64,000 nucleotides of DNA from the IMG/VR virus record IMGVR_UViG_3300027770_000025, positions 1 to 64,000 of that record. One strand, given 5' to 3'. Below the pieces are notes generated by a model. That model worked only from the letters and a program-made list of their open reading frames with translations. It was not told where the DNA came from and made no database searches. This document shows, one piece after another, positions 1 to 49,821 of this stretch (position 1 is the stretch's first letter; every line of letters starts with the position of its first letter). A program made the translations under genes and the position numbers.

Positions 1-3000
1 TAGTTCCTGCTGATCCTGAAGTACCTGATGTACCACTAGTTCCTGAGGTTCCTGAAGTTCCGCTAGTTCCTGCTGATCCTGAAGTTCCACTAGTTCCTGC
101 TGATCCTGAGGTACCCGATGTACCACTGGTTCCTGATGTACCACTAGTTCCTGCTGATCCTGAAGTTCCGCTAGTTCCTGCTGATCCTGAAGTTCCGCTA
201 GTTCCTGCTGATCCTGAAGTACCCGATGTACCACTAGTTCCTGATGTACCACTAGTTCCTGCTGATCCTGAAGTACCTGATGTACCACTAGTTCCTGAGG
301 TTCCTGAAGTTCCACTAGTTCCTGAGGTTCCTGAAGTTCCGCTAGTTCCTGCTGATCCTGAAGTTCCGCTAGTTCCTGCTGATCCTGAAGTACCCGATGT
401 ACCACTAGTTCCTGAAGTTCCACTAGTTCCTGCTGATCCTGAAGTTCCACTAGTTCCTGCTGATCCTGAAGTTCCACTAGTTCCTGAAGTTCCACTAGTT
501 CCTGCTGATCCTGCTGATCCTGAAGTTCCTGCTGATCCTGAAGTACCACTAGTTCCTGAAGTACCCGATGTACCACTGGTTCCTGATGTACCACTAGTTC
601 CTGCTGATCCTGAAGTTCCACTAGTTCCTGAGGTTCCACTAGTTCCTGCTGATCCTGAAGTTCCTGAAGTTCCACTAGTTCCTGCTGATCCTGCTGATCC
701 TGAAGTACCTGATGTACCACTAGTTCCTGCTGATCCTGAAGTTCCGCTAGTTCCTGCTGATCCTGAGGTACCCGATGTACCACTAGTTCCCGAAGTTCCG
801 CTAGATCCGCTAGATCCTGTTTTTCCACTAGATCCTGCTGATCCTGCTGATCCTGAAGTTCCACTAGTTCCTGCTGATCCTGAGGTACCCGATGTACCAC
901 TAGTTCCTGAAGTTCCACTAGTTCCTGCTGATCCTGAAGTACCACTAGTTCCTGAAGTTCCACTAGATCCAGCAGCTCCATCAGACATCCAACTAACTGA
1001 ATAGGTTTCTGTTCCTCCCCACTGTCCATTCCCAACTACAAAAGTAAGAGGTATTGTCCAAAAGTTATTGAGGACGGTATAGAACAAGTTTCCAACTGTA
1101 AATATACCAAAAACACTAGTATCATTAACCTGCGTTATTTGTAAACGAGAAGGTTTACCCGCGGCTTGATTAGCATCTAAAGCATTAAACCAACCAGTAT
1201 ACGCTCCAGTTAAAGAAGAATCTGAAATATCTATTGATGTGGTATCGGCAAAATTAGCGTTGTCGCCAATGATAATACCGGAGCCCATCTCCGGTGGGTT
1301 ATTAGTCTCCCACCTTCCTGAGTTTGCACCATCAATTCCTGGATCCCCTTGAGATCCTTGAGCTCCCGATGTACCACTTGAACCGCTAGACCCCGATGTT
1401 CCTGAAGAACCGCTTGAACCTGAAGTTCCTGAAGAACCGCTAGTACCACTAGTTCCTGCTGATCCTGAAGTACCACTAGTTCCTGAAGTACCACTAGTTC
1501 CTGAAGTTCCACTAGTTCCACTAGTTCCTGCTGATCCTGATGTACCTGATGTACCACTAGTTCCTGAAGTTCCGCTAGTTCCTGCTGATCCTGAAGTACC
1601 ACTAGTTCCTGCTGATCCTGAAGTACCTGATGTACCACTAGTTCCTGAAGTTCCACTAGTTCCTGCTGATCCTGAAGTACCTGATGTACCACTAGTTCCT
1701 GAAGTTCCACTAGTTCCTGAAGTACCTGAAGTTCCACTAGTTCCTGAAGTTCCACTAGTACCTGCTGATCCCGAAGTACCTGAAGTTCCTGCTGATCCTG
1801 AAGTACCACTAGTTCCTGAAGTACCACTAGTTCCTGAAGTTCCACTAGTTCCACTAGTTCCTGCTGATCCTGATGTACCTGCTGATCCTGATGTACCTGA
1901 AGTTCCACTAGTTCCTGAAGTTCCTGCTGATCCTGAAGTACCTGCTGATCCTGAAGTACCTGCTGATCCTGAAGTACCACTAGTTCCTGAAGTACCTGAT
2001 GTACCACTAGTTCCTGCTGATCCTGAAGTTCCACTAGTTCCTGAAGTACCTGCTGATCCCGAAGTACCTGAAGTTCCTGCTGATCCTGAAGTACCACTAG
2101 TTCCTGAAGTACCACTAGTTCCTGAAGTTCCACTAGTTCCACTAGTTCCTGCTGATCCTGATGTACCTGCTGATCCTGATGTACCTGAAGTTCCACTAGT
2201 TCCTGAAGTTCCTGCTGATCCTGAAGTACCTGCTGATCCTGAAGTACCTGATGTACCACTAGTTCCTGAAGTTCCACTAGTTCCTGAAGTACCTGAAGTT
2301 CCACTAGTTCCTGCTGATCCTGAAGTACCTGCTGATCCTGAAGTACCACTAGTTCCTGAAGTACCTGAAGTACCACTAGTTCCTGCTGATCCTGAAGTAC
2401 CTGATGTACCACTAGTTCCTGAAGTTCCACTAGTTCCTGCTGATCCTGAAGTACCTGAAGTTCCTGCTGATCCTGAAGTACCACTAGTTCCTGAAGTACC
2501 ACTAGTTCCTGATGACCCATTAACCCCTGATGTTCCCGCTGATCCGGAATTTCCAGATGTACCACTAGATCCTGCAGTTCCATCTAGTCCGGCTATTCCT
2601 GAAGTACCTGCTGATCCTGAAGTACCACTAGTTCCTGAAGTTCCTGCTGATCCTGATGTACCACTAGTTCCTGATGATCCTGAAGTACCACTAGTTCCTG
2701 CTGATCCTGAAGTACCTGAGGTACCTGCTGATCCTGAAGTTCCTGATGTTCCTGCTGATCCTGAAGTTCCGCTAGTTCCTGATGTTCCTGCTGATCCTGA
2801 TGTACCGCTAGATCCGCTAGATCCTGTTTTTCCACTAGATCCTGCTGATCCTGCTGATCCTGAAGTTCCGCTAGTTCCTGCTGATCCTGAAGTACCCGAT
2901 GTACCACTAGTTCCTGAGGTTCCACTAGTTCCTGCTGATCCTGAAGTACCTGATGTACCACTAGTTCCTGAGGTTCCTGAAGTTCCGCTAGTTCCTGCTG

Positions 3001-6000
3001 ATCCTGAAGTTCCACTAGTTCCTGCTGATCCTGAGGTACCCGATGTACCACTAGTTCCTGAAGTTCCACTAGTTCCTGCTGATCCTGAAGTTCCTGATGT
3101 ACCACTAGTTCCTGAAGTTCCACTAGTTCCTGCTGATCCTGAAGTTCCGCTAGTTCCTGCTGATCCTGAAGTACCTGATGTACCACTAGTTCCTGAAGTT
3201 CCACTAGTTCCTGCTGATCCTGAAGTTCCGCTAGTTCCTGCTGATCCTGAAGTACCTGATGTACCACTAGTTCCTGAGGTTCCTGAAGTTCCGCTAGTTC
3301 CTGCTGATCCTGAAGTTCCACTAGTTCCTGCTGATCCTGAAGTACCTGATGTACCACTAGTTCCTGAGGTTCCACTAGTTCCTGCTGATCCTGAAGTTCC
3401 GCTAGTTCCTGCTGATCCTGAAGTACCTGATGTACCACTAGTTCCTGAGGTTCCACTAGTTCCTGCTGATCCTGAAGTTCCGCTAGTTCCTGCTGATCCT
3501 GAAGTACCACTAGTTCCTGCTGATCCTGAAGTACCTGATGTACCACTAGTTCCTGAAGTTCCACTAGTTCCTGAAGTTCCTGCTGATCCTGAAGTACCTG
3601 ATGTTCCACTAGTTCCTGATGATCCATTAACTCCTGAAGTTCCTGCTGATCCTGAAGTTCCTGCTGATCCTGAAGTTCCTGAAGTTCCTGAAGTTCCACT
3701 AGTTCCTGCTGATCCTGAGGTACCTGCTGATCCTGAGGTACCACTAGTTCCTGAAGTACCTGCTGATCCTGAGGTACCACTAGTTCCTGAAGTACCTGCT
3801 GATCCTGAGGTACCACTAGTTCCTGAGGTTCCACTAGTTCCTGATGATCCGTTAACTCCTGAAGTACCTGCTGATCCTGAAGTACCTGATGTACCACTAG
3901 TTCCTGAAGTTCCACTAGTTCCTGCTGATCCTGAAGTTCCTGAAGTTCCTGAAGTTCCTGCTGATCCTGAGGTACCACTAGTTCCTGCTGATCCTGAAGT
4001 TCCACTAGTTCCTGCTGATCCTGAAGTTCCACTAGTTCCTGATGATCCCGAAGTACCTGATGTACCACTAGTTCCTGAAGTTCCACTAGTTCCTGCTGAT
4101 CCTGAAGTTCCTGAAGTTCCTGAAGTTCCTGAAGTTCCTGAAGTTCCACTAGTTCCTGAAGTTCCACTAGTTCCTGATGATCCCGAAGTACCACTAGTTC
4201 CTGAAGTTCCACTAGTTCCTGAAGTACCTGCTGATCCTGAAGTTCCACTAGTTCCTGAGGTTCCACTAGTTCCTGATGATCCGTTAACTCCTGAAGTTCC
4301 TGCTGATCCTGAAGTTCCCGAAGAACCATTTGCTCCCGATGTTCCTGCTGATCCTGAAGTTCCTGAAGAACCACTTGCTCCTGATGTTCCTGCTGATCCT
4401 GAAGTTCCAGAAGAACCATCTGCTCCTGATGTTCCAGAAGAACCATCTGCTCCTGAAGTTCCAGAAGATCCACTTGCTCCTGAAGTTCCCGAAGAACCAT
4501 TTGCTCCCGATGTTCCTGCTGATCCTGAAGTTCCTGAAGAACCACTTGCTCCTGATGTTCCTGCTGATCCTGAAGTTCCAGAAGAACCATTTTCTCCTGA
4601 TGTTCCAGAAGATCCACTTACTCCTGATGTTCCAGAAGATCCACTTGCTCCTGAAGTTCCCGAAGAACCATTTGCTCCCGATGTTCCTGCTGATCCTGAA
4701 GTTCCTGAAGAACCACTTGCTCCTGATGTTCCTGCTGATCCTGAAGTTCCAGAAGAACCATTTTCTCCTGATGTTCCAGAAGATCCACTTGCTCCTGAAG
4801 TTCCCGAAGAACCATTTGCTCCCGATGTTCCTGCTGATCCTGAAGTTCCTGAAGAACCACTTACTCCTGATGTTCCTGCTGATCCTGAAGTTCCAGAAGA
4901 ACCATTTTCTCCTGATGTTCCAGAAGATCCACTTGCTCCTGATGTTCCAGAAGATCCACTTGCTCCTGAAGTTCCCGAAGAACCATTTGCTCCCGATGTT
5001 CCTGCTGATCCTGAAGTTCCTGAAGAACCACTTGCTCCTGATGTTCCTGCTGATCCTGAAGTTCCAGAAGAACCATTTTCTCCTGATGTTCCAGAAGATC
5101 CACTTGCTCCTGATGTTCCTGCTGATCCTGATGTTCCAGAAGATCCACTTGCTCCTGAAGTTCCCGAAGAACCACTTGCTCCTGATGTTCCCGAAGAACC
5201 ACTTGCTCCTGAAGTTCCTGCTGATCCTGATGTTCCCGAAGAACCATCTGCTCCTGATGTTCCCGAAGAACCGTTTTCTCCTGATGTTCCTGCTGATCCT
5301 GAAGTTCCTGAAGAACCACTTGCTCCTGATGTTCCTGCTGATCCTGAAGTTCCAGAAGAACCATCTGCTCCTGATGTTCCAGAAGAACCATCTGCTCCTG
5401 ATGTTCCCGAAGAACCATCTGCTCCTGAAGTTCCAGAAGATCCTGCTGCTCCTGATGTTCCTGCTGATCCTGATGTTCCAGAAGAACCATCTGCTCCTGA
5501 AGTTCCAGAAGAACCACTTGCTCCTGATGTTCCAGAAGATCCGTTTGCTCCTGATGTTCCAGAAGATCCATCTGCTCCTGAAGTTCCAGAAGATCCACTT
5601 GCTCCTGAAGTTCCCGAAGAACCATTTGCTCCCGATGTTCCTGCTGATCCTGAAGTTCCTGAAGAACCACTTGCTCCTGATGTTCCTGCTGATCCTGAAG
5701 TTCCAGAAGAACCATTTTCTCCTGATGTTCCAGAAGATCCACTTGCTCCTGATGTTCCTGCTGATCCTGATGTTCCAGAAGATCCACTTGCTCCTGATGT
5801 TCCCGAAGAACCACTTGCTCCTGAAGTTCCCGAAGAACCACTTGCTCCTGAAGTTCCTGCTGATCCTGATGTTCCCGAAGAACCATTTGCTCCTGAAGTT
5901 CCCGAAGAACCGTTTGCTCCTGAAGTTCCAGAAGAACCACTTGCTCCTGAAGTTCCCGAAGAACCACTTGCTCCTGAAGTTCCCGAAGAACCACTTGCTC

Positions 6001-6868
6001 CTGATGTTCCTGCTGATCCTGAAGTTCCAGAAGAACCATCTGCTCCTGATGTTCCCGAAGAACCATCTGCTCCTGAAGTTCCAGAAGATCCTGCTGCTCC
6101 TGAAGTTCCAGAAGTTCCAGAAGATCCTGCTGATCCTGATGTTCCTGCTGATCCTGATGTTCCAGAAGAACCATCTGCTCCTGATGTTCCCGAAGAACCA
6201 TCTGCTCCTGAAGTTCCAGAAGATCCTGCTGCTCCTGAAGTTCCAGAAGATCCTGCTGCTCCTGATGTTCCTGCTGATCCTGATGTTCCAGAAGAACCAC
6301 TTGCTCCTGAAGTTCCAGAAGATCCACTTGCTCCTGATGTTCCAGAAGATCCACTTGCTCCTGATGTTCCAGAAGATCCACTTGCCCCTGAAGTTCCCGA
6401 AGAACCACTTGCTCCTGATGTTCCCGAAGAACCACTTGCTCCTGAAGTTCCTGCTGATCCTGATGTTCCCGAAGAACCGTTTGCTCCTGATGTTCCCGAA
6501 GAACCGTTTGCTCCTGATGTTCCCGAAGAACCACTTGCTCCTGATGTTCCCGAGGAACCTGCTGCTCCTGATGTTCCCGAGGAACCTGCTGCTCCTGATG
6601 TTCCCGAGGAACCTGCTGCTCCTGATGTTCCCGAAGAACCACTTGCTCCTGAAGTTCCTGCTGATCCTGATGTTCCCGAAGAACCATTTGCTCCTGAAGT
6701 TCCCGAAGAACCGTTTGCTCCTGATGTTCCCGAAGAACCTGCTGCTCCTGATGTTCCCGAAGAACCTGCTGCTCCTGATGTTCCCGAGGAACCTGCTGCT
6801 CCTGATGTTCCCGAAGAACCACTTGCTCCTGAAATACCACTAGTTCCACTGCTTCCACTTCCCGTTCC
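1..6868 (-). repeat. 9-nt period coding repeat (e.g. GGAACTAGT, GGATCAGCA, GGAACTTCA) interrupted at ~980-1330
   Basis: Directly visible tandem 9-mers. Unit composition switches near 4320, from GAS/GAN/GEN/GAD+GSS to GTS/GSA. Confidence 0.95.
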
Positions 6869-7798
6869 TCCTGATATAGTTATTGTGGTATATCCGCTAG
6901 AATCAGTTACAGACGAAACGCCAGATCCAGTAAAGTTTAGACCAGTAACACCTACTCCTATCTGGGATCCACTAGAATAAGTATTTATAGCAGATCCTGA
7001 TCCCCCTGATCCACCAGGTATTGTAACCGTTACCGTATTGTATTGATCCCCAGTTTCAGTTACTGTAACACCAGCACCGGTAAATCCGACATACCAAGCT
7101 CCGTTGAAATGCTGTCCCGTTTGTCCAATGATTACTGGAACATAATCAGAAATTGCAAGTACGTCTATATTATAAGCAGCCTCTGCTATACCAGCTGGTA
7201 GATCCGGATATACATCATTCGAAACAGCATTTTGATATGTCCTATAATCAGATTGCTGAGATATTGCACTATAAGTAGCATTAGTAGGTACTCTATTAAG
7301 AGAACTGTATGCACCATCCTCATCATAAGTACAGAAGAAATTAATGTATTGATAAGATGGTTTATCGGTTATTTTGTTAATTACAAAGGTATTAAATACC
7401 CCCGAAATAGGATTAAATGATCCAGCATCTGTTGCTATGTTTGTAACTAAAAAACCCTCCAATAAATCAGCAGTTGTATAAATGCCGTTTACCTCAAGAT
7501 AAGTTCCTTCACAATAAAATACGCCGTCACCACACGATGTGGTAATGGTAACACCAGTATTAGTTGCTGTTCCATTGGCGGACATTACGAATGAAGAAGC
7601 ACCGTAATTAACAGAAATTACGGTAGTTGATGAGGGAATTCCTGTACCTGTTACAGCAAGACCTGGTATAATGAGATTAATATTAGATACGCTAGTAACT
7701 ACATTACTTCCGTTTGATACGTTTCCTGTTATCTGTGGTCCGTTGGTAAAAAATTCAGGTATAAATAATTGACCGGTTATTCTAGGTTGACTCCCCAT
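1..7798 (-). CDS. Giant Gly-X-Y (Ser/Thr-rich) repeat fibre protein, >=2599 aa, 3' end outside window
   Basis: ATG at 7798 (MGSQPRITGQLFIPEFF...). The frame was spot-checked at 7798, ~2580, ~1370 and position 4 and stays in phase. ~310-aa unique N-terminus, then GTS/GSA/GSS/GAS/GAN triplets, with a ~120-aa globular insert at ~980-1330. Absent from the ORF track because no stop lies in the window; the track's ELQ/QDQQ ORFs are its shadows. Confidence 0.9.
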   Translation of the reverse strand, partial: MGSQPRITGQLFIPEFFTNGPQITGNVSNGSNVVTSVSNINLIIPGLAVTGTGIPSSTTVISVNYGASSFVMSANGTATNTGVTITTSCGDGVFYCEGTYLEVNGIYTTADLLEGFLVTNIATDAGSFNPISGVFNTFVINKITDKPSYQYINFFCTYDEDGAYSSLNRVPTNATYSAISQQSDYRTYQNAVSNDVYPDLPAGIAEAAYNIDVLAISDYVPVIIGQTGQHFNGAWYVGFTGAGVTVTETGDQYNTVTVTIPGGSGGSGSAINTYSSGSQIGVGVTGLNFTGSGVSSVTDSSGYTTITISGGTGSGSSGTSGISGASGSSGTSGAAGSSGTSGAAGSSGTSGAAGSSGTSGANGSSGTSGANGSSGTSGSAGTSGASGSSGTSGAAGSSGTSGAAGSSGTSGAAGSSGTSGASGSSGTSGANGSSGTSGANGSSGTSGSAGTSGASGSSGTSGASGSSGTSGASGSSGTSGASGSSGTSGASGSSGTSGASGSSGTSGSAGTSGAAGSSGTSGAAGSSGTSGADGSSGTSGADGSSGTSGSAGTSGSAGSSGTSGTSGAAGSSGTSGADGSSGTSGADGSSGTSGSAGTSGASGSSGTSGASGSSGTSGASGSSGTSGANGSSGTSGANGSSGTSGSAGTSGASGSSGTSGASGSSGTSGASGSSGTSGSAGTSGASGSSGTSGENGSSGTSGSAGTSGASGSSGTSGSAGTSGANGSSGTSGASGSSGTSGADGSSGTSGANGSSGTSGASGSSGTSGADGSSGTSGSAGTSGAAGSSGTSGADGSSGTSGADGSSGTSGADGSSGTSGSAGTSGASGSSGTSGSAGTSGENGSSGTSGADGSSGTSGSAGTSGASGSSGTSGASGSSGTSGASGSSGTSGSAGTSGASGSSGTSGENGSSGTSGSAGTSGASGSSGTSGSAGTSGANGSSGTSGASGSSGTSGASGSSGTSGENGSSGTSGSAGTSGVSGSSGTSGSAGTSGANGSSGTSGASGSSGTSGENGSSGTSGSAGTSGASGSSGTSGSAGTSGANGSSGTSGASGSSGTSGVSGSSGTSGENGSSGTSGSAGTSGASGSSGTSGSAGTSGANGSSGTSGASGSSGTSGADGSSGTSGADGSSGTSGSAGTSGASGSSGTSGSAGTSGANGSSGTSGSAGTSGVNGSSGTSGTSGTSGTSGSAGTSGTSGTSGTSGTSGSSGTSGTSGTSGTSGTSGTSGTSGTSGSAGTSGTSGTSGTSGTSGSSGTSGTSGSAGTSGTSGSAGTSGTSGSAGTSGTSGTSGSAGTSGTSGTSGTSGTSGSAGTSGVNGSSGTSGTSGTSGTSGSAGTSGTSGTSGSAGTSGTSGTSGSAGTSGSAGTSGTSGTSGTSGSAGTSGSAGTSGVNGSSGTSGTSGTSGSAGTSGTSGTSGTSGTSGTSGSAGTSGTSGSAGTSGTSGSAGTSGTSGTSGTSGTSGSAGTSGTSGSAGTSGTSGTSGTSGTSGSAGTSGTSGSAGTSGTSGTSGTSGTSGTSGSAGTSGTSGSAGTSGTSGTSGTSGTSGSAGTSGTSGSAGTSGTSGTSGTSGTSGSAGTSGTSGTSGTSGTSGSAGTSGTSGSAGTSGTSGTSGTSGTSGTSGSAGTSGTSGTSGTSGTSGSAGTSGTSGSAGSAGSSGKTGSSGSSGTSGSAGTSGTSGTSGSAGTSGTSGSAGTSGTSGSAGTSGTSGSSGTSGTSGSAGTSGTSGTSGSAGTSGIAGLDGTAGSSGTSGNSGSAGTSGVNGSSGTSGTSGTSGTSGSAGTSGTSGSAGTSGTSGTSGTSGTSGSAGTSGTSGTSGTSGTSGSAGTSGSAGTSGTSGTSGTSGTSGTSGTSGTSGSAGTSGSAGTSGTSGTSGTSGSAGTSGSAGTSGTSGTSGTSGTSGTSGTSGSAGTSGTSGSAGTSGTSGTSGSAGTSGTSGTSGTSGTSGSAGTSGSAGTSGSAGTSGTSGTSGTSGSAGTSGSAGTSGTSGTSGTSGTSGTSGTSGSAGTSGTSGSAGTSGTSGTSGTSGTSGTSGTSGTSGTSGTSGSAGTSGTSGTSGTSGTSGSAGTSGTSGSAGTSGTSGTSGTSGTSGSAGTSGTSGTSGTSGTSGTSGTSGSAGTSGTSGSSGTSGSSGSSGTSGSSGSSGTSGAQGSQGDPGIDGANSGRWETNNPPEMGSGIIIGDNANFADTTSIDISDSSLTGAYTGWFNALDANQAAGKPSRLQITQVNDTSVFGIFTVGNLFYTVLNNFWTIPLTFVVGNGQWGGTETYSVSWMSDGAAGSSGTSGTSGTSGSAGTSGTSGTSGTSGTSGSAGTSGTSGSAGSAGSSGKTGSSGSSGTSGTSGTSGTSGSAGTSGTSGSAGTSGTSGTSGSAGSAGTSGTSGTSGSAGTSGTSGTSGTSGSAGTSGTSGTSGTSGTSGTSGTSGSAGTSGSAGSAGTSGTSGTSGTSGSAGTSGTSGSAGTSGTSGTSGTSGTSGSAGTSGTSGSAGTSGTSGTSGTSGTSGTSGTSGTSGTSGSAGTSGTSGTSGTSGTSGSAGTSGTSGSAGTSGTSGSAGTSGTSGTSGTSGTSGSAGTSGTSGSAGTSGTSGTSGTSGTSGTSGSAGT

Positions 7799-7810
7799 GT
7801 TTCTTTTATT

Positions 7811-45853: not shown

Positions 45854-46285
45854 TTATTTTGTGTTTAGGTATTCTTCTATCTCAGCTTCGTTTGCTAATC
45901 TAATAGGAACGAATAACGCAAATCCATTATCATCTTCGAAATGATTACACGTATCTAAACGAAATCCAAATTTATACCTCCAATGTTCAAAAACATTTTC
46001 TTCTGCATTCCATTTACCTACTTTTGCTCTTCTATACTCGCCATAGTAGAATTGGTTGTCAACTAGATCTGCCTTTGGTATAGCACCAGCAGCTATTAAT
46101 TTTGGTACATAGAATTCTCTATACTCCTTTTCATCAACACGTGGAATAACAGGAACGTCCTCTAGTTTTTCTATCTTTGGTAACGTCAGCCAATACTCCT
46201 TCATCCTTGCTTCTCTTTCCGCTTTTAACTTGAGTCTTTCAGCTTCAAATTTGAGCAGGTACTCTTCTTTTATTCTATCTTCCAT
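45854..46285 (-). CDS. Hypothetical phage protein
   Basis: Start moved to MEDRIK (46285) because the longer ORF overlaps tRNA-Cys; C-terminal HFEDDNGFALFVPI. Confidence 0.7.
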   Translation of the reverse strand: MEDRIKEEYLLKFEAERLKLKAEREARMKEYWLTLPKIEKLEDVPVIPRVDEKEYREFYVPKLIAAGAIPKADLVDNQFYYGEYRRAKVGKWNAEENVFEHWRYKFGFRLDTCNHFEDDNGFALFVPIRLANEAEIEEYLNTK

Positions 46286-46311
46286 GACTTTTATTTTTAT
46301 TTGTTTATTTG

Positions 46312-46385
46312 AGGCACCGGTAGGATTCGAACCCACGTCTTCCGCTTTGCAGGCGGTCATCTAGAAGCCACTCGGCCACGGTGCC
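46312..46385 (-). tRNA. tRNA-Cys(GCA)
   Basis: GGCACCG/CGGTGCC acceptor, U73, CCGC-CTGCAAA-GCGG, GTGGG-TTCGAAT-CCTAC; D arm irregular. Confidence 0.8.
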
Positions 46386-46419
46386 ATTGTTATATGTTTT
46401 CTTTATCCCAAGTTATGAG

Positions 46420-46492
46420 ATCCTATAGAGGGATTCGAACCCCCGACATTCTCATTAAAATGAGATGCTCTAACCAGCTGAGCTAATGTAGA
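46420..46492 (-). pseudogene. Degenerate tRNA-Lys(TTT)-like
   Basis: Good D and T arms, but the anticodon loop is only 6 nt (TTTTAA) and the acceptor stem is mispaired. Confidence 0.65.
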
Positions 46493-46518
46493 AAAAAGTT
46501 TCGGGATAAAAAAATATT

Positions 46519-47467: not shown

Positions 47468-47524
47468 TTAATATTGTTAACTATTTTTCTATATATTTTT
47501 TTTATTAGGAATATACGGGTATCG

Positions 47525-47597
47525 TGGCTTCAGAAGGATTCGAACCCTCACCAACTCGTTCGAAGCGAGGTATGCTAATCCATTACACTATGAAGCC
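47525..47597 (-). tRNA. tRNA-Arg(TCG)
   Basis: GGCTTCA/TGAAGCC acceptor, CTCG-CTTCGAA-CGAG, GAGGG-TTCGAAT-CCTTC. Confidence 0.85.
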
Positions 47598-47600
47598 ATG

Positions 47601-47631
47601 AAAAAGGACTCTGTATTTATCAGAGTCCTTT
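47601..47631 (-). terminator. Terminator closing the protein+ncRNA unit
   Basis: Perfect 11-bp AAAGGACTCTG/CAGAGTCCTTT stem ending in a U-tract on minus. Confidence 0.8.
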
Positions 47632-47972
47632 CCATTTAATATTTCGGTATCTGAGATGATAAAGAGCATAGACTAAAACCAAATCTAAGTCAATATCAAA
47701 GACCCTTTCCTACTACAAAGTCAAAGTCAAAAACTAAGTCTCATTTTCGTTAGCCAATTTTTCGCATGCGATAACCTGTCTAACTGGTGAGTTCTATCTC
47801 AGTTTTTAGAATTTGTAGGAAAGGCGGGATATGATTATACCCACCCGGAGGCGGATAAGATTTGTAGTTTATAAATATAGGGGCATTCAGCCAGCATATA
47901 AAAAATCCCTACCATCCCAGATCAAATGAATGTGGAATCATCTTGTGACTATCCACACCCAACCCAATTCCT
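47632..47972 (-). ncRNA. Candidate ~340-nt structured RNA with pseudoknot and hexamer-periodic tracks
   Basis: No long ORF in a gene-dense genome. Crossing helices 47704-13/47815-24 (10 bp) and 47651-57/47796-802 (7 bp), nested GTTAG/CTAAC and CTCA/TGAG, two 5' hairpins. Confidence 0.65.
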
Positions 47973-48890
47973 TTATTCAGCTACGTCCTTTAAGAACATA
48001 TCGATCACCTCCTGAAATCTAGGATCGATACCTATTCTCAAAGCTGCTGTTTTTTTAATTTCATTCTGACGCTCTTCTTCAAACAAATGCGAAGCTTGAC
48101 GGTAGTTAGCCTGCCATTCCTCTTTTGCCTTGCTGTAATCGCTAATGACTTTTTGATTCACCTCATTAACAGAAGCTTCCTTAACCGCATTATCTTTAGC
48201 AATTCTAGCGTTCTCGGTGGTTACTAAATTCTTAACCTTCGCCTTGAAGTAGTTAACACGTTGCTCGTGAGCTCTATGAACTCCAGCAAGTTGTTCATGT
48301 AAATCACCTAACTCTTCAGACGTGTGATGTACACTAACCTTAAGTGGAGTTTTCTTTCCAGACTCTACTTCGATCCACTCTAGAGTTTTAAGTGTAGGTA
48401 ACTCTGATCTTAAGTTATCTAATTTACCCCCTTTGTGAATGAATTGTCCTACGTGAGATGCAAAAGCTTCCGCTTCTAAATACTCGTTGTATTCGGCTAA
48501 AGAAAGTTGGCTCCAAGCCCAATCTTCGTTAACTGAATCATCTATTTCTGCACTTTGAAGTTCACCGCATTTAGGAATCTCGATATCAAATTCCATGCGG
48601 GTGTTTCTAAGTCCATTAAGCATCTCTTCTTTGGCCTTAATGTTTTCCATTAAAAAAGCCTGGGTAGCGTGAAGCTTTGATTTATCTGCTAGCAGATCAA
48701 CCACGTTTTCTGGCATCTTTTTGCCCGGAGTTTCGATATAGGTCTCCTCTCCTATTTTAAGGACCTTTTCAACGTTGTTGATGTCTCTTAATTTAAAAGA
48801 GATGTCTCTTGATCTTTGGTTGCAAAGATTAGAGATTGACTGTGCTTGAGACATTGATAGTCCCTTCGAAGCTAAAGAATTTTTTCTCAT
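47973..48890 (-). CDS. Uncharacterised helical/coiled-coil protein upstream of the candidate ncRNA
   Basis: 305 aa, E/K/A-rich, N-terminus GLSMSQAQSISNLC; no recognisable catalytic motif. Confidence 0.85.
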   Translation of the reverse strand: MRKNSLASKGLSMSQAQSISNLCNQRSRDISFKLRDINNVEKVLKIGEETYIETPGKKMPENVVDLLADKSKLHATQAFLMENIKAKEEMLNGLRNTRMEFDIEIPKCGELQSAEIDDSVNEDWAWSQLSLAEYNEYLEAEAFASHVGQFIHKGGKLDNLRSELPTLKTLEWIEVESGKKTPLKVSVHHTSEELGDLHEQLAGVHRAHEQRVNYFKAKVKNLVTTENARIAKDNAVKEASVNEVNQKVISDYSKAKEEWQANYRQASHLFEEERQNEIKKTAALRIGIDPRFQEVIDMFLKDVAE

Positions 48891-48928
48891 ATGGTATAAA
48901 AAATTAAAGTATTTTCTTATTTATAGCG

Positions 48929-48962
48929 CAAACTTATGGTATTGTTACGGGATAAAAAAATA
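48929..48962 (-). promoter_or_regulatory. Bacteroidetes-type promoter for the 47973 gene
   Basis: Minus strand TTTTTTTATCCCG-N11-TAAGTTTG. Confidence 0.7.
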
Positions 48963-49371: not shown

Positions 49372-49821
49372 TTATAAAATTTGTTTATTAATTGTTCCAT
49401 TTATCTCATAATCCCATCTAACCCTTATGCATGTTTCTGGTCTTTTACAGAGCTTAAGATAGAGATTTATATAACCCATGATATGGCAACACCCTATGGG
49501 ATTTGCAGAGTGTGTATAACATTGTGGCAGATCTTGTCCGGTAGATTTAGAATACTCTATTAACCATTTAGCAGCATCTAGACCGGTCTTTTCTTTTATC
49601 TTTGAATAGTCAATTACGTAAGTTTCCCTAACCTCTTCAACATAATGGCGGGTAGCAGAAAAATCTAGATCGTGATCTAGTGTTATAATTTCAATGTTAT
49701 CCAATCCGGTTTTTTCTACCAGATCGATAAACTCTTTGAAGTTCTTAACCACAACCCATTCGGTATCAGCTGATGGTGATTCTAATGGTGTTCTCTGGTC
49801 GTCTAGATAGATTGAAATCAT
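49372..49821 (-). CDS. Cyclic-phosphate-processing receiver-domain protein
   Basis: IYLDD.R.P, W.VVKN..EF, ITLDHDL, KTG.D.AKWL, HSANP.G. Confidence 0.75.
   Translation of the reverse strand: MISIYLDDQRTPLESPSADTEWVVVKNFKEFIDLVEKTGLDNIEIITLDHDLDFSATRHYVEEVRETYVIDYSKIKEKTGLDAAKWLIEYSKSTGQDLPQCYTHSANPIGCCHIMGYINLYLKLCKRPETCIRVRWDYEINGTINKQIL

What the first reader, a model, noticed from the sequence alone, without database searches (positions are those of the whole stretch)
47601..48962. Self-contained unit: uncharacterised helical protein followed by a ~340-nt pseudoknotted non-coding RNA
Seen: a dedicated promoter (TTTTTTTATCCCG..TAAGTTTG, 48929-48962), a 305-aa helical protein, ~340 nt with no sizeable ORF, then a perfect 11-bp terminator. 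This is the longest non-coding gap in a window where most genes abut or overlap. On the transcribed strand CCUUUCCUAC (47824-15) pairs with GUAGGAAAGG (47713-04) and CUGAGAU (47802-796) pairs with AUCUCAG (47657-51). These helices cross, forming a long-range pseudoknot. There is a nested arm (CUCA/UGAG, GUUAG/CUAAC, UCGCAUGCGA) and two 5' hairpins (47931-57, 47823-46). It is not a tRNA, and I do not recognise it as tmRNA, RNase P or an intron. Inference: a protein-RNA (RNP) system sitting among tRNAs, possibly acting on translation or counter-defence. The protein has no RT or nuclease motif that I can see.
Basis: partly seen in the sequence, partly recalled or inferred. Interest (0 to 1): 0.85.

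Follow-up and report, generated by a model that had tools for sequence, protein, structure and literature searches.

The report
New phage protein–structured RNA gene pair
A giant uncultured lake phage carries a gene for an unknown protein that is almost always followed by a roughly 325-base, intricately folded RNA of a family not described before; lake RNA samples hold it at far higher depth than the neighbouring genes, and its function is unknown, though it looks built to hold a protein that binds single-stranded RNA.

Summary
The unit is real, but it is not pseudoknotted as described. On the minus strand lie a Bacteroidota-type promoter box, an orphan 305-aa protein (47973-48890), and about 6 nt after its stop a ~324-nt non-coding RNA (47967-47644). 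The window is from a 348.6-kb IMG/VR phage contig. The RNA is conserved in more than 100 related phage loci and matches no Rfam 15 family. Covariation supports nested helices P1-P4 and P6: 94.3% of cells paired against 75.9% in shuffles, 0/500 shuffles as high. The second helix does not: AUCUCAG belongs to a 15-bp end-closing helix, so no pseudoknot is needed. Gene and RNA co-occur in both search directions, down to very distant relatives, while flanking genes and tRNAs vary. Contigs from four lake metatranscriptomes cover 47644-47957 with little or nothing on the flanks. The best-conserved unpaired parts are two U-rich tracts of GNNUUU hexamers. One tract is invariably 39 nt and starts with GGUCUUUGA, which resembles both a published CspB optimum and the B. 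subtilis boxA core. My inference is a stable RNP or protein-binding platform used in host takeover. The mechanism is unproven. No related protein or RNA family was found.

The parts
48929..48936 (-). Promoter-like -7 box TAAGTTTG (Bacteroidota sigma-A type, TAnnTTTG), 38 nt upstream of the ATG
   Evidence: Read from the sequence. The TAnnTTTG motif occurs 22-58 nt upstream of the ATG in 16 of 50 related loci against 2.2 expected from shuffles. That this motif is the Bacteroidota -7 element is my own knowledge, not tested here.
47973..48890 (-). Gene for an orphan 305-aa protein (stop TAA at 47973-47975), the partner of the RNA
   Evidence: ORF. No Pfam, PHROG, NCBIfam or PADLOC family. 2541 homologues at E<=0.001, and 804 clusters at 50% identity, nearly all about 300 aa or fragments of that. 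AlphaFold2 pLDDT 88.7, with no PDB fold match (best E 0.1, TM about 0.2). In BFVD only an uncharacterised homologue matches. 39 invariant residues, including H146, H152, H189, H198, H205, R206 and E209.
47644..47967 (-). About 324-nt structured non-coding RNA (proposed mature form, P1 to P1)
   Evidence: A profile HMM finds it in 61 of 62 unique related loci. A covariance model finds 85 hits, with a single copy in the window. Covariation is shown. Metatranscriptome contigs cover 47644-47957 in 4 RNA runs. No Rfam family matches. The longest ORF has a median of 36 aa across 82 homologues.
47964..47967 (-). P1 5' strand (UUGG), pairs with 47644-47647 (CCGA)
   Evidence: 92% of cells paired, 3 of 4 pairs with compensatory changes.
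47927..47961 (-).
   Evidence: 10 of 10 pairs with compensatory changes, 86% paired. The unconstrained MFE fold reproduces it.
47907..47922 (-). P3 5' strand, pairs with 47649-47664; a 15-bp helix that ties the 5' and 3' ends together
   Evidence: 90% paired, 15 of 15 pairs compensated, 0 of 300 shuffles as high. It holds the top-ranked pairs in an unbiased G-test/APC scan.
47825..47906 (-). Variable junction with lineage-specific hairpins; in the window CCGCC-UCCG-GGUGG at about 47838-47854
   Evidence: Alignment A2: length and sequence vary, and relatives carry UUCG, GAAA or UCCG-capped hairpins at this position.
47815..47824 (-).
   Evidence: 93-98% paired and every pair compensated. It is retained even in reduced variants that lack the P6 arm (L210, L096).
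47798..47807 (-). P-alpha 5' strand (AAAAACUGAG), pairs with 47729-47738 (CUUAGUUUUU); probable
   Evidence: MFE folds. The CUGAG/CUUAG core is 89-100% pairable. Compensation across subfamilies: UUAAAGUU/AACUUUAA and CCAA/UUGG. Support is moderate, because a local GAG/CUC hairpin is an alternative.
47749..47791 (-).
   Evidence: P6 is 97% paired with 7 of 8 pairs compensated. The tip is variable and carries a roughly 45-nt insertion in some lineages. The arm is absent in L210 and L096.
47714..47728 (-). S1b: U-rich unpaired tract (GACUUUGACUUUGUA; family consensus GUCUUUGCCUUUG)
   Evidence: 55% U. No complementarity to the facing strand beyond shuffles. Tandem Repeats Finder reports a period-6 repeat at 47716-47731. 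Nearly invariant columns.
47665..47703 (-). S2: 39-nt tract of GNNUUU hexamers that starts with GGUCUUUGA and ends with CUAUR
   Evidence: Length is 39.0 nt in all 50 sequences, and a motif spacing of 6 dominates (95 of 172 spacings). There is no conserved pairing partner (median z -0.15). GGUCUUUG is the most conserved stretch of the RNA. It is kept in the most distant relatives.
47602..47634 (-). Terminator-like hairpin (11-bp stem, then U-rich tail); local to this phage and not part of the conserved element
   Evidence: Only 5 of 82 relatives have such a hairpin within 90 nt. RNA contigs stop at 47644-47660, before it.

Best explanation
What it is (high confidence, about 0.9). This is a previously undescribed two-gene module found only in phage-like contigs. 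It consists of an orphan 305-aa protein gene and, normally starting about 6 nt after its stop codon, a roughly 324-nt stable, highly structured non-coding RNA on the same strand. The window comes from a 348.6-kb IMG/VR contig. Related loci lie on contigs from about 10 kb to 373 kb, and the hosts are probably Bacteroidota.

The fold. The RNA folds without any required pseudoknot. P1 and the 15-bp P3 clamp the two ends together. P2 is a conserved hairpin. A variable junction leads to P4, which encloses an arm made of P-alpha, P-beta and P6.

How it most likely works (inferred, about 0.35). The unit is transcribed from a host-type promoter, and the RNA outlasts its mRNA. The helices serve as a rigid frame that displays two conserved U-rich tracts for which no conserved pairing partner was found. 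These tracts are built of GNNUUU hexamers: S1b of about 15 nt, and S2 of exactly 39 nt. They flank the 3' strand of P4. Such a fixed-length, 6-nt-periodic array is what a protein with a footprint of about 6 nt per unit would read. The ligand is either the module's own protein, giving an RNP (the two internal repeats of the protein and the two tracts of the RNA fit this), or a host single-strand RNA binder that the RNA titrates or recruits. The best-conserved unit, (G)GUCUUUGA, resembles two published binding sites: the optimum for B. subtilis cold-shock protein CspB, and the core of the B. subtilis boxA read by NusB-S10. The expected outcome is reprogramming of host transcription or translation, or of RNA surveillance, during infection.

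Shown: existence, conservation, fold, coupling, and presence in RNA libraries at higher depth than the flanks. Inferred: that the tracts are single-stranded in vivo, the ligand, and the effect.
For: Conservation and coupling. The RNA is found in 61 of 62 unique loci recovered through the protein, and the 62nd has it 540 nt downstream. In an RNA-first pattern scan, 43 of 44 RNA-positive loci carry the protein gene upstream on the same strand, adjacent or nearly so except in L096 (about 4.9 kb away). The one exception is cut off by a contig end. The RNA persists next to very distant protein relatives: L207 and L210 (their proteins 100% and 37% identical to P0262) and L209 (26% identical). Flanking genes are not conserved.

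Structure. RNAalifold gives 43 pairs, 36 with compensatory changes. An unbiased covariation scan ranks the same helices on top. On 85 sequences, 94.3% of cells pair against 75.9% in shuffles, with 0 of 500 shuffles as high, and slid controls give 39-60%. G-U pairs are common (for example 37 at one P6 pair), which fits the minus strand. Variable hairpins are capped by UUCG, GAAA or UCCG loops.

Not coding. The median longest ORF is 36 aa, and lengths of 325-422 nt vary out of frame.

Expression. Six RNA runs hold only 12-22% of the sampled words of a 2-kb stretch. Their contigs cover 47644-47957 in all four runs laid. The flanking ORF bins read zero in X16 and X17, 0.4-2.8 in X20, and up to 3.9 in X15. 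Contigs of relatives, which overlap the window for only about 33 nt, reach depth 41-109, including a 330-nt contig.

U-rich tracts. S2 has constant length and a 6-nt period, Tandem Repeats Finder reports period 6, and there is no pairing partner beyond shuffles. The tracts and P4 survive in variants that have lost the whole P6 arm.

Ligand leads. The CspB optimum is GTCTTTG/T (PMC1904285). The B. subtilis boxA-like consensus is AUGAUCUUUGAAA (PMC13753749).

Host-type promoter. TAnnTTTG occurs upstream in 16 of 50 loci against 2.2 expected.
Against: No binding was tested, and the ligand proposals rest on a 7-nt resemblance that could be chance in a U-rich RNA. The CspB and boxA data come from Bacillus, not from Bacteroidota. 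Single-sequence thermodynamics leave S2 only 42% unpaired on average, so it may form weak A-U or G-U contacts. One lineage (L096) has the RNA about 4.9 kb downstream of the protein gene, behind eight other ORFs, so adjacency is not obligatory. The protein has no recognisable RNA-binding domain, and its many invariant His, Glu and Arg residues could equally mean an enzyme. Contig depth is a poor measure of expression, and RNA libraries can contain DNA.
Confidence: 0.4

Rival explanations
1. A cis-acting processive antitermination element, comparable to lambda nut, the rrn leader or HK022 put. The nascent RNA, through its boxA-like UCUUUGA units, loads NusB-S10 (perhaps together with the 305-aa protein acting like N) onto RNA polymerase. 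The polymerase then reads through the following terminator and through untranslated tRNA genes.
For: The heptamer UCUUUGA is identical to the core of the B. subtilis boxA-like consensus. The layout in the window is promoter, gene, RNA, terminator hairpin, then tRNA and a long run of genes on the same strand, which recalls pR-cro-nutR-tR1 (my own knowledge). tRNA arrays are frequent neighbours: 16 of 50 loci have one within 1 kb, and L008 and L036 carry several tRNA genes just upstream. The module lies towards contig ends, as early operons often do.
Against: The element is far larger and more ornate than known nut or put sites. RNA-library contigs cover a discrete, end-clamped region. Only 5 of 82 relatives have a terminator just downstream. 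In 27 of 50 a U-run follows P1 directly, as if transcription ended there. Nine or ten repeats are more than one Nus complex needs. No boxB-like partner has been defined. The Bacteroidota boxA sequence was not examined.
Confidence: 0.15
2. A stand-alone decoy or sponge RNA for counter-defence or host shut-off. The U-rich repeats would titrate a host RNA-binding protein or RNase, for example a cold-shock, S1 or RRM protein, an RNase E/Y-type enzyme, or an anticodon nuclease (CUUUGA resembles an anticodon loop with anticodon UUG). The neighbouring protein would only help to make or stabilise the RNA.
For: The RNA tracts stay recognisable next to proteins that have diverged to 26% identity. The RNA core is 70-86% identical where the proteins are 48-75% identical, as expected if the RNA contacts a conserved host component. 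The repeat array resembles the design of sponge RNAs. GUCUUUG equals the CspB optimum. The module sits in variable, tRNA-rich accessory regions.
Against: It does not explain why the protein gene co-occurs in essentially every locus in both search directions. No target is identified. The resemblance to an anticodon loop covers only 6-7 nt in a single-stranded context.
Confidence: 0.15
3. A toxin-antitoxin-like or addiction pair, in which the abundant RNA neutralises a harmful 305-aa protein, in the manner of a type III system.
For: The pair co-occurs strictly as a mobile two-part unit in otherwise variable neighbourhoods. The RNA is far deeper than the mRNA in RNA libraries.
Against: There is no match to ToxN, AbiQ or any PADLOC or Pfam toxin family. 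The RNA is not an array of tandem repeats upstream of the gene: the only tandem repeat reported is a 16-nt period-6 stretch. The carriers are large, uncultured phage-like contigs and the family is absent from the cultured-phage records searched; their lifestyle is not known. In L096 the two parts are about 4.9 kb apart.
Confidence: 0.07
4. A purely cis-acting 3' UTR (mRNA stabiliser or terminator), or a DNA-level element such as a replication origin with iterons or a packaging site, or a decayed coding sequence.
For: It directly follows the stop codon. A relative's contig runs from the ORF into the RNA (X20, 47650-48101). The short period-6 repeats could look like iterons.
Against: Compensatory changes include G-U pairs, and the variable hairpins carry UNCG or GNRA caps, both of which point to RNA. 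RNA-library contigs cover the element without the ORF in X16 and X17. In L096 it follows an unrelated gene. There is no conserved ORF. Six or more conserved helices over about 325 nt are far more than a terminator or stabiliser needs.
Confidence: 0.05

Closest known systems
GOLLD and ROOL RNAs (large ornate phage/prophage RNAs, Rfam)
   Same: They are large, elaborately folded non-coding RNAs carried by phages. They often sit next to tRNA genes, have no known function, and were discovered by comparative genomics (my own knowledge, plus 10.1101/2024.12.08.627333 listed).
   Different: There is no sequence or structure match at Rfam E<=10. This RNA is smaller, about 325 nt. It is strictly coupled to one protein gene, and it is dominated by two unpaired hexamer-repeat tracts. 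Self-assembly into cages was not tested.
boxA/nut antitermination sites (lambda nut, rrn leaders) read by NusB-S10
   Same: The conserved unpaired unit GGUCUUUGA shares UCUUUGA with the B. subtilis boxA-like consensus AUGAUCUUUGAAA (PMC13753749). In the window it lies between a promoter-proximal gene and a terminator.
   Different: It carries 9-10 repeats instead of one box, embedded in a 325-nt end-clamped RNA that appears as a discrete region in RNA libraries. No boxB or N-type peptide is present. Downstream terminators are not conserved. Binding was not tested.
Protein-sponge sRNAs (CsrB/RsmZ type)
   Same: Repeated short single-stranded motifs are displayed on a structured scaffold, and the RNA is abundant.
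   Different: The motif is GNNUUU in two long linear tracts with fixed spacing, not GGA in hairpin loops. The carrier is a phage, and a dedicated protein gene is attached.
phi29 prohead RNA (pRNA)
   Same: A phage-encoded structured RNA that works as part of a protein machine.
   Different: There is no Rfam match. The RNA is twice the size. There is no evidence for a packaging role or for intermolecular loop-loop pairs.
Type III toxin-antitoxin systems (ToxIN)
   Same: A strictly coupled protein gene plus structured RNA that travels as a unit.
   Different: The gene order is reversed, there are no 30-40-nt tandem repeats, and the protein has no ToxN-like domain.

Membership tests
Any Rfam 15 family (tmRNA, RNase P, 6S, SRP, group I/II introns, GOLLD, ROOL, HEARO, pRNA and others) | A covariance-model match at or near the family's gathering score | tested here: not met
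   cmscan of the window at gathering thresholds returns only 5 tRNAs. In the region at E<=10, only chance-level hits far below gathering appear. Six relatives at E<=0.1 show nothing in the element.
tmRNA | A tRNA-like domain (acceptor stem plus T-arm) and a tag reading frame that begins with a resume codon | tested here: not met
   ARAGORN finds no tmRNA in the window or in 78 downstream regions. The tag-like string GCUAACGAAAAU... overlaps the covarying 3' strand of P6, so the resemblance is coincidental.
boxA/nut-type antitermination RNA | A single-stranded boxA consensus | tested here: inconclusive
   UCUUUGA is identical to the core of the B. subtilis consensus and is predicted to lack a conserved pairing partner. 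The Bacteroidota boxA was not available for comparison.
boxA/nut-type antitermination RNA | Binding of NusB-S10 and terminator read-through in cis | not testable with these tools
   This needs an EMSA and a reporter assay. Downstream terminators are present in only 5 of 82 relatives.
Type III toxin-antitoxin (ToxIN/CptIN/TenpIN) | A tandem array of about 30-40-nt RNA repeats upstream of the toxin gene | tested here: not met
   Tandem Repeats Finder reports only a 16-nt period-6 stretch, and the RNA lies downstream of the gene.
Type III toxin-antitoxin (ToxIN/CptIN/TenpIN) | A ToxN/AbiQ-fold endoribonuclease | tested here: not met
   No Pfam or PADLOC hit. No PDB fold match.
Retron / RT-associated ncRNA, or TnpB/IscB omega-RNA | An adjacent reverse transcriptase or RuvC nuclease gene | tested here: not met
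   The partner protein has no RT or nuclease domain in Pfam, NCBIfam or PADLOC. The AlphaFold2 model matches no such fold.
Sponge RNA for cold-shock-domain or S1-type proteins (a functional class, not a sequence family) | Multiple accessible copies of the protein's preferred motif | tested here: inconclusive
   GUCUUU[GU] occurs 1-3 times per RNA in 45 of 50 sequences, and almost only in the S1-S2 part. GTCTTTG/T is the CspB optimum. Binding and the host protein were not tested.
Structured RNA in general | Statistically supported covariation on the transcribed strand | tested here: met
   All five measures exceed 500 of 500 shuffles, and the slid controls are far lower.
Protein-coding gene or decayed CDS | A conserved reading frame | tested here: not met
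   Stops occur in all six frames. The median longest ORF is 36 aa in 82 homologues, and length variation is not in multiples of three. TAG and TAA are both used as ordinary stops by the partner gene in relatives, so stop-codon recoding does not rescue a frame.

The most novel reading that the evidence does not exclude
A widespread, previously unrecognised class of phage ribonucleoprotein. An orphan protein and a 325-nt end-clamped RNA would together present an array of boxA-like or Csp-optimal GNNUUU hexamers that captures a core host factor (NusB-S10 or cold-shock/S1-type proteins). This would switch host transcription or translation over to the phage early in infection. It would be an RNA-based host-takeover device with no known relative.
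Probability: 0.2. Interest if true: 0.9.

Novelty: categorically new. Interest (0 to 1): 0.78.

Why it matters
Large structured RNAs with strong covariation are rare, and most that have been found turned out to be ribozymes, riboswitches or cores of RNPs.

This one comes with three advantages:
- It has a fixed protein partner.
- Its distribution is broad: the protein family spans 804 clusters at 50% identity, mostly in lake and other environmental viromes.
- Lake metatranscriptomes hold it at higher depth than its flanking genes.

It therefore offers a tractable new RNA-protein system from the poorly understood large phages of Bacteroidota. Its hexamer-repeat platform suggests a concrete and testable way for a phage to capture a host single-strand RNA binder.

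Even if the mechanism proposed here is wrong, the RNA family, its fold and its partner protein family appear to be undescribed and can be added to RNA and protein family databases.

Tried and rejected
- Known RNA families: Rfam at gathering and at permissive thresholds, on the window and on six relatives, gave nothing.
- tmRNA: the ANENET* tag-like frame is an accident of the P6 strand, and ARAGORN is negative.
- Stop-codon recoding that would turn the gap into a gene: rejected, because relatives end the partner gene with TAG as well as TAA, and the window uses all three stops.
- Small conserved ORF: rejected.
- My own first drawing, a local CUGAG/CUCA hairpin with a fully unpaired S1: revised after subfamily comparison to P-alpha plus P-beta. 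The local GAG/CUC alternative cannot be excluded.
- Pairing of S2 or S1b with the facing junction strands: no better than shuffles.
- Antisense targets of the RNA elsewhere in the 64-kb window: about 29 11-mer matches once self-matches are removed, against 18 in shuffles, with nothing extended.
- Protein function by sequence or fold: Pfam, PHROGs, NCBIfam, PADLOC, PDB sequences, Foldseek against PDB and BFVD, ESM Atlas, a 1.8-billion-protein profile search, and a second-hop search from a distant member all returned only uncharacterised proteins.
- Cultured phages: no DNA or protein match in 50,697 GenBank phage records.
- RbpB (the Bacteroides RRM protein) as ligand: its published motifs do not resemble GNNUUU.
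- Prior description: sequence-string searches of the literature found nothing. A catalogue of about 10,000 candidate viral structured RNAs (PMC10690425) might list it, but I could not check.
- The count of structure pairs with my own typed structure: not run, to avoid pasting long strings. I computed the equivalent counts in Python and used the stored structure.
Full report
Setting. The window is part of IMG/VR contig UViG_3300027770_000025 (348,582 bp). It has 36% G+C and nearly all genes on the minus strand. The neighbourhood of the finding is an accessory region. It holds tRNA genes (His, Cys, an odd tRNA-like gene, and Arg) and auxiliary genes: glycosyltransferase, UDP-galactopyranose mutase, 2OG-Fe(II) oxygenase, a glutamine-synthetase-like protein, a ClpB-like ATPase, and a cREC_REC receiver domain.

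The observation. On the minus strand a 305-aa ORF (47973-48890) is followed by 375 nt without a sizeable ORF, up to tRNA-Arg at 47524-47597. The gap folds much better than shuffled sequence, with z = -6.2. An 11-bp hairpin with a U-rich tail lies at 47602-47634. A TAAGTTTG box lies 38 nt upstream of the ATG. This is not the longest ORF-poor stretch in the window, since 6859-7810 is longer.

Conservation. A protein-based scan of viral contigs found 108 loci, of which 80 were kept, with 47-100% amino-acid identity. BLASTN and then an iterated nucleotide profile found the downstream element in 61 of 62 unique loci. It starts 2-16 nt after the stop codon and spans about 330 profile positions. In the remaining locus, and in four other lineages, extra sequence of about 130-600 nt lies between gene and RNA: L009, L023, L042, L061/63 and L090. 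The tRNA neighbour and the flanking genes are not conserved.

A scan in the opposite direction used a short RNA pattern on viral contigs. It returned 44 loci that hold the RNA, and 43 of them carry the protein gene upstream on the same strand. The exception is truncated by a contig end. In L096 the gene and the RNA are about 4.9 kb apart, and the RNA follows an unrelated ORF. Very distant protein relatives still carry the RNA: L209, whose protein is 26% identical to another member, and also L207 and L210. The U-rich tracts are almost unchanged in them. No cultured phage has the protein or the DNA. GTDB representative genomes hold it only on six MAG contigs.

Structure. RNAalifold on 50 sequences predicted 43 pairs, 36 with double compensatory changes. 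An unbiased G-test/APC scan of all column pairs ranked the same helices at the top. My counts, with shuffle and slide controls, were as follows:
- P1: 4 bp, 92% paired.
- P2: 10 bp, 86% paired.
- P3: 15 bp, 90% paired, all pairs compensated, 0 of 300 shuffles as high.
- P4: 10 bp, 93% paired, all pairs compensated, 0 of 300 shuffles as high.
- P6: 8 bp, 93% paired.

A covariance model of the 3' domain (R1) found one hit per locus. The 85-sequence alignment gave 94.3% paired cells against 75.9% in shuffles, 0 of 500 shuffles as high on all five measures, and 39-60% when partners were slid. The unconstrained MFE fold of the window sequence reproduces P2, P3, P4, P-alpha, P-beta and P6.

The second long-range helix (CUGAGAU with AUCUCAG) is only 55% pairable and no better than controls. 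AUCUCAG is part of the 3' strand of P3, whose partner is 47922-47907. So the structure is nested and no pseudoknot is required. CUGAG most likely pairs with CUUAG in S1 (helix P-alpha). The evidence is compensation between subfamilies: UUAAAGUU with AACUUUAA, and CCAA with UUGG. A local GAG/CUC hairpin remains a possible alternative. G-U pairs and UUCG, GAAA or UCCG-capped variable hairpins point to RNA on the minus strand.

Not coding. All frames carry stops. Across 82 homologues the median longest ORF is 36 aa, and lengths run from 325 to 422 nt. Relatives terminate the partner gene with TAG or TAA, so there is no sign of recoding.

Expression. Six metatranscriptome runs from lakes hold only 12-22% of the sampled words of a 2-kb stretch around the unit. 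I laid four of them on 5.5 kb. Contigs identical to the window cover 47644-47812, 47783-47918, 47889-47957 and 47654-47908. The protein gene and other flanks are at zero in X16 and X17, at 0.4-2.8 in X20, and at up to about 4 in X15. Contigs of related RNAs, which match the window for only about 33 nt, reach word depths of 41-109, and one of them is 330 nt long. One relative's contig runs from the ORF's 3' end into the RNA. The contig ends at 47644-47660 coincide with the end of P1/P3, and the terminator hairpin is not covered. These are assembler contigs, so they show presence and rough relative depth, not exact ends.

The conserved unpaired parts. The most conserved nucleotides outside the helices are two U-rich tracts. 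One is S1, AGACUUAGUUUUUGUCUUUGCCUUUG, whose 5' half is probably P-alpha. The other is S2, GGUCUUUGA followed by further hexamers and CUAUAU. S2 is 39 nt in all 50 sequences, and a 6-nt spacing of its U-runs dominates. Tandem Repeats Finder reports period 6. Neither S2 nor the 3' half of S1 has complementarity to the facing strands beyond shuffles, although thermodynamic folding leaves S2 only 42% unpaired. Variants that lack the whole P6 arm keep P3, P4 and both tracts (L210, L096). The tracts plus P4 therefore look like the functional core.

The heptamer GUCUUUG equals the optimum found for B. subtilis CspB (PMC1904285). UCUUUGA equals the core of the B. subtilis rrn boxA-like sequence bound by NusB (PMC13753749). 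These are leads, not tests.

The protein. It has no family in Pfam, PHROGs, NCBIfam or PADLOC and no sequence relative in the PDB. The AlphaFold2 model is confident (pLDDT 88.7, pTM 0.81). It shows two helix / beta-hairpin / long-helix repeats plus C-terminal helices. It matches no solved fold, and in BFVD it matches only an uncharacterised homologue. The family has 804 clusters at 50% identity, nearly all about 300 aa or shorter fragments, and none has a Pfam domain even two search steps out. Invariant residues include five histidines, R206, E209 and a basic NYFKAKVK helix. This is compatible with RNA binding or with catalysis.

Context clues. A TAnnTTTG box occurs upstream of the gene in 16 of 50 loci against 2.2 expected, which suggests host-polymerase transcription in Bacteroidota. 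A tRNA lies within 1 kb in 16 of 50 loci. The unit lies closer to contig ends than chance would give: the median relative distance is 0.096 against 0.25, with KS p about 1e-5. This is uncorrected for relatedness among contigs or for assembly breaks. A canonical terminator follows in only 5 of 82 relatives, but a U-run follows P1 directly in 27 of 50.

Interpretation. What is shown is a new, strictly coupled protein-RNA module found only in phage-like contigs, with a well-supported nested fold, and with RNA-library contigs that cover the RNA far more deeply than its flanks. What is inferred is that the RNA acts by presenting a fixed hexamer array to a protein, either its own partner or a host OB-fold-type binder such as NusB-S10 or a cold-shock/S1 protein. 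The rivals are a nut-like cis antiterminator, a stand-alone decoy, a TA-like pair, or a mere 3' UTR. They are listed with their tests. None is excluded except the coding, DNA-only and known-family readings.

Noticed in passing
window 46419-46493 (-): A tRNA-like gene that ARAGORN cannot name (it reports 'anticodon tt'). The anticodon arm reads CUCA-UUUUAA-UGAG, which is a 6-nt loop. Rfam still scores it as a tRNA at 42.4 bits. It may be a pseudo-tRNA or an unusual decoder.
   Followed up: partly
window 2593-6858: Three minus-strand ORFs lie in one frame, separated only by TAA stops at 4861-4863 and 4618-4620. They sit in a repetitive stretch of 49% G+C (window mean 36%) that is also open on the plus strand (837-aa ORF 4330-6843). 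It looks like a long repeat-protein gene, perhaps collagen-like in another frame, rather than a case of read-through.
   Followed up: partly
window 6859-7810: A 952-nt stretch with no ORF above 62 aa, longer than the gap of the finding. Rfam gathering thresholds give nothing there. It was not examined for conservation or structure.
   Followed up: no
L052, L064, L065, L066, L077 (about 50-70 nt upstream of the protein gene) and L040 (downstream of the RNA): A conserved motif, ACUGAGUGCAGAGGGG, recurs in intergenic DNA of one group of related phages. It may be a phage-specific promoter or regulatory site.
   Followed up: no
L003, L008, L010, L014, L024, L058: tip of helix P6 (for example L008:4110-4160): A conserved insertion of about 45 nt (…UCAUAGAGAAAGAGGAAUCUUUACCACUAGA…) replaces the short tip hairpin of P6 in several lineages. 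It looks like an accessory RNA domain.
   Followed up: no
L210:2640-2746 and L096:700-1050 (-): Reduced RNA variants that lack the whole P-beta/P6 arm but keep P4 and both U-rich tracts (P3 was also seen in L096). In L096 the RNA sits about 4.9 kb downstream of the partner gene, behind eight other ORFs.
   Followed up: partly
L009, L023, L042, L061/L063, L090: Extra sequence of about 130-600 nt lies between the protein gene and the RNA: small ORFs in some of these loci, and in L042 a strong hairpin.
   Followed up: partly
Contig positions of L001-L080 (table): The module lies unusually close to contig ends: the median relative distance is 0.096 against 0.25 expected. The cause could be proximity to a genome terminus or assembly breaks in a hypervariable region.
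   Followed up: partly
window 49372-49821 (-): A protein with a cREC_REC (cyclic-phosphate-processing receiver) domain lies two genes upstream of the unit. Such domains are linked to RNA repair. Homologues near the unit were seen in only 3 of 80 loci, counting the window's own locus.
   Followed up: partly
window 45854-46360 (-) and 46311-46385 (-): The mechanical ORF 45854-46360 overlaps tRNA-Cys by 50 nt at its start, so its true start is probably further downstream.
   Followed up: no
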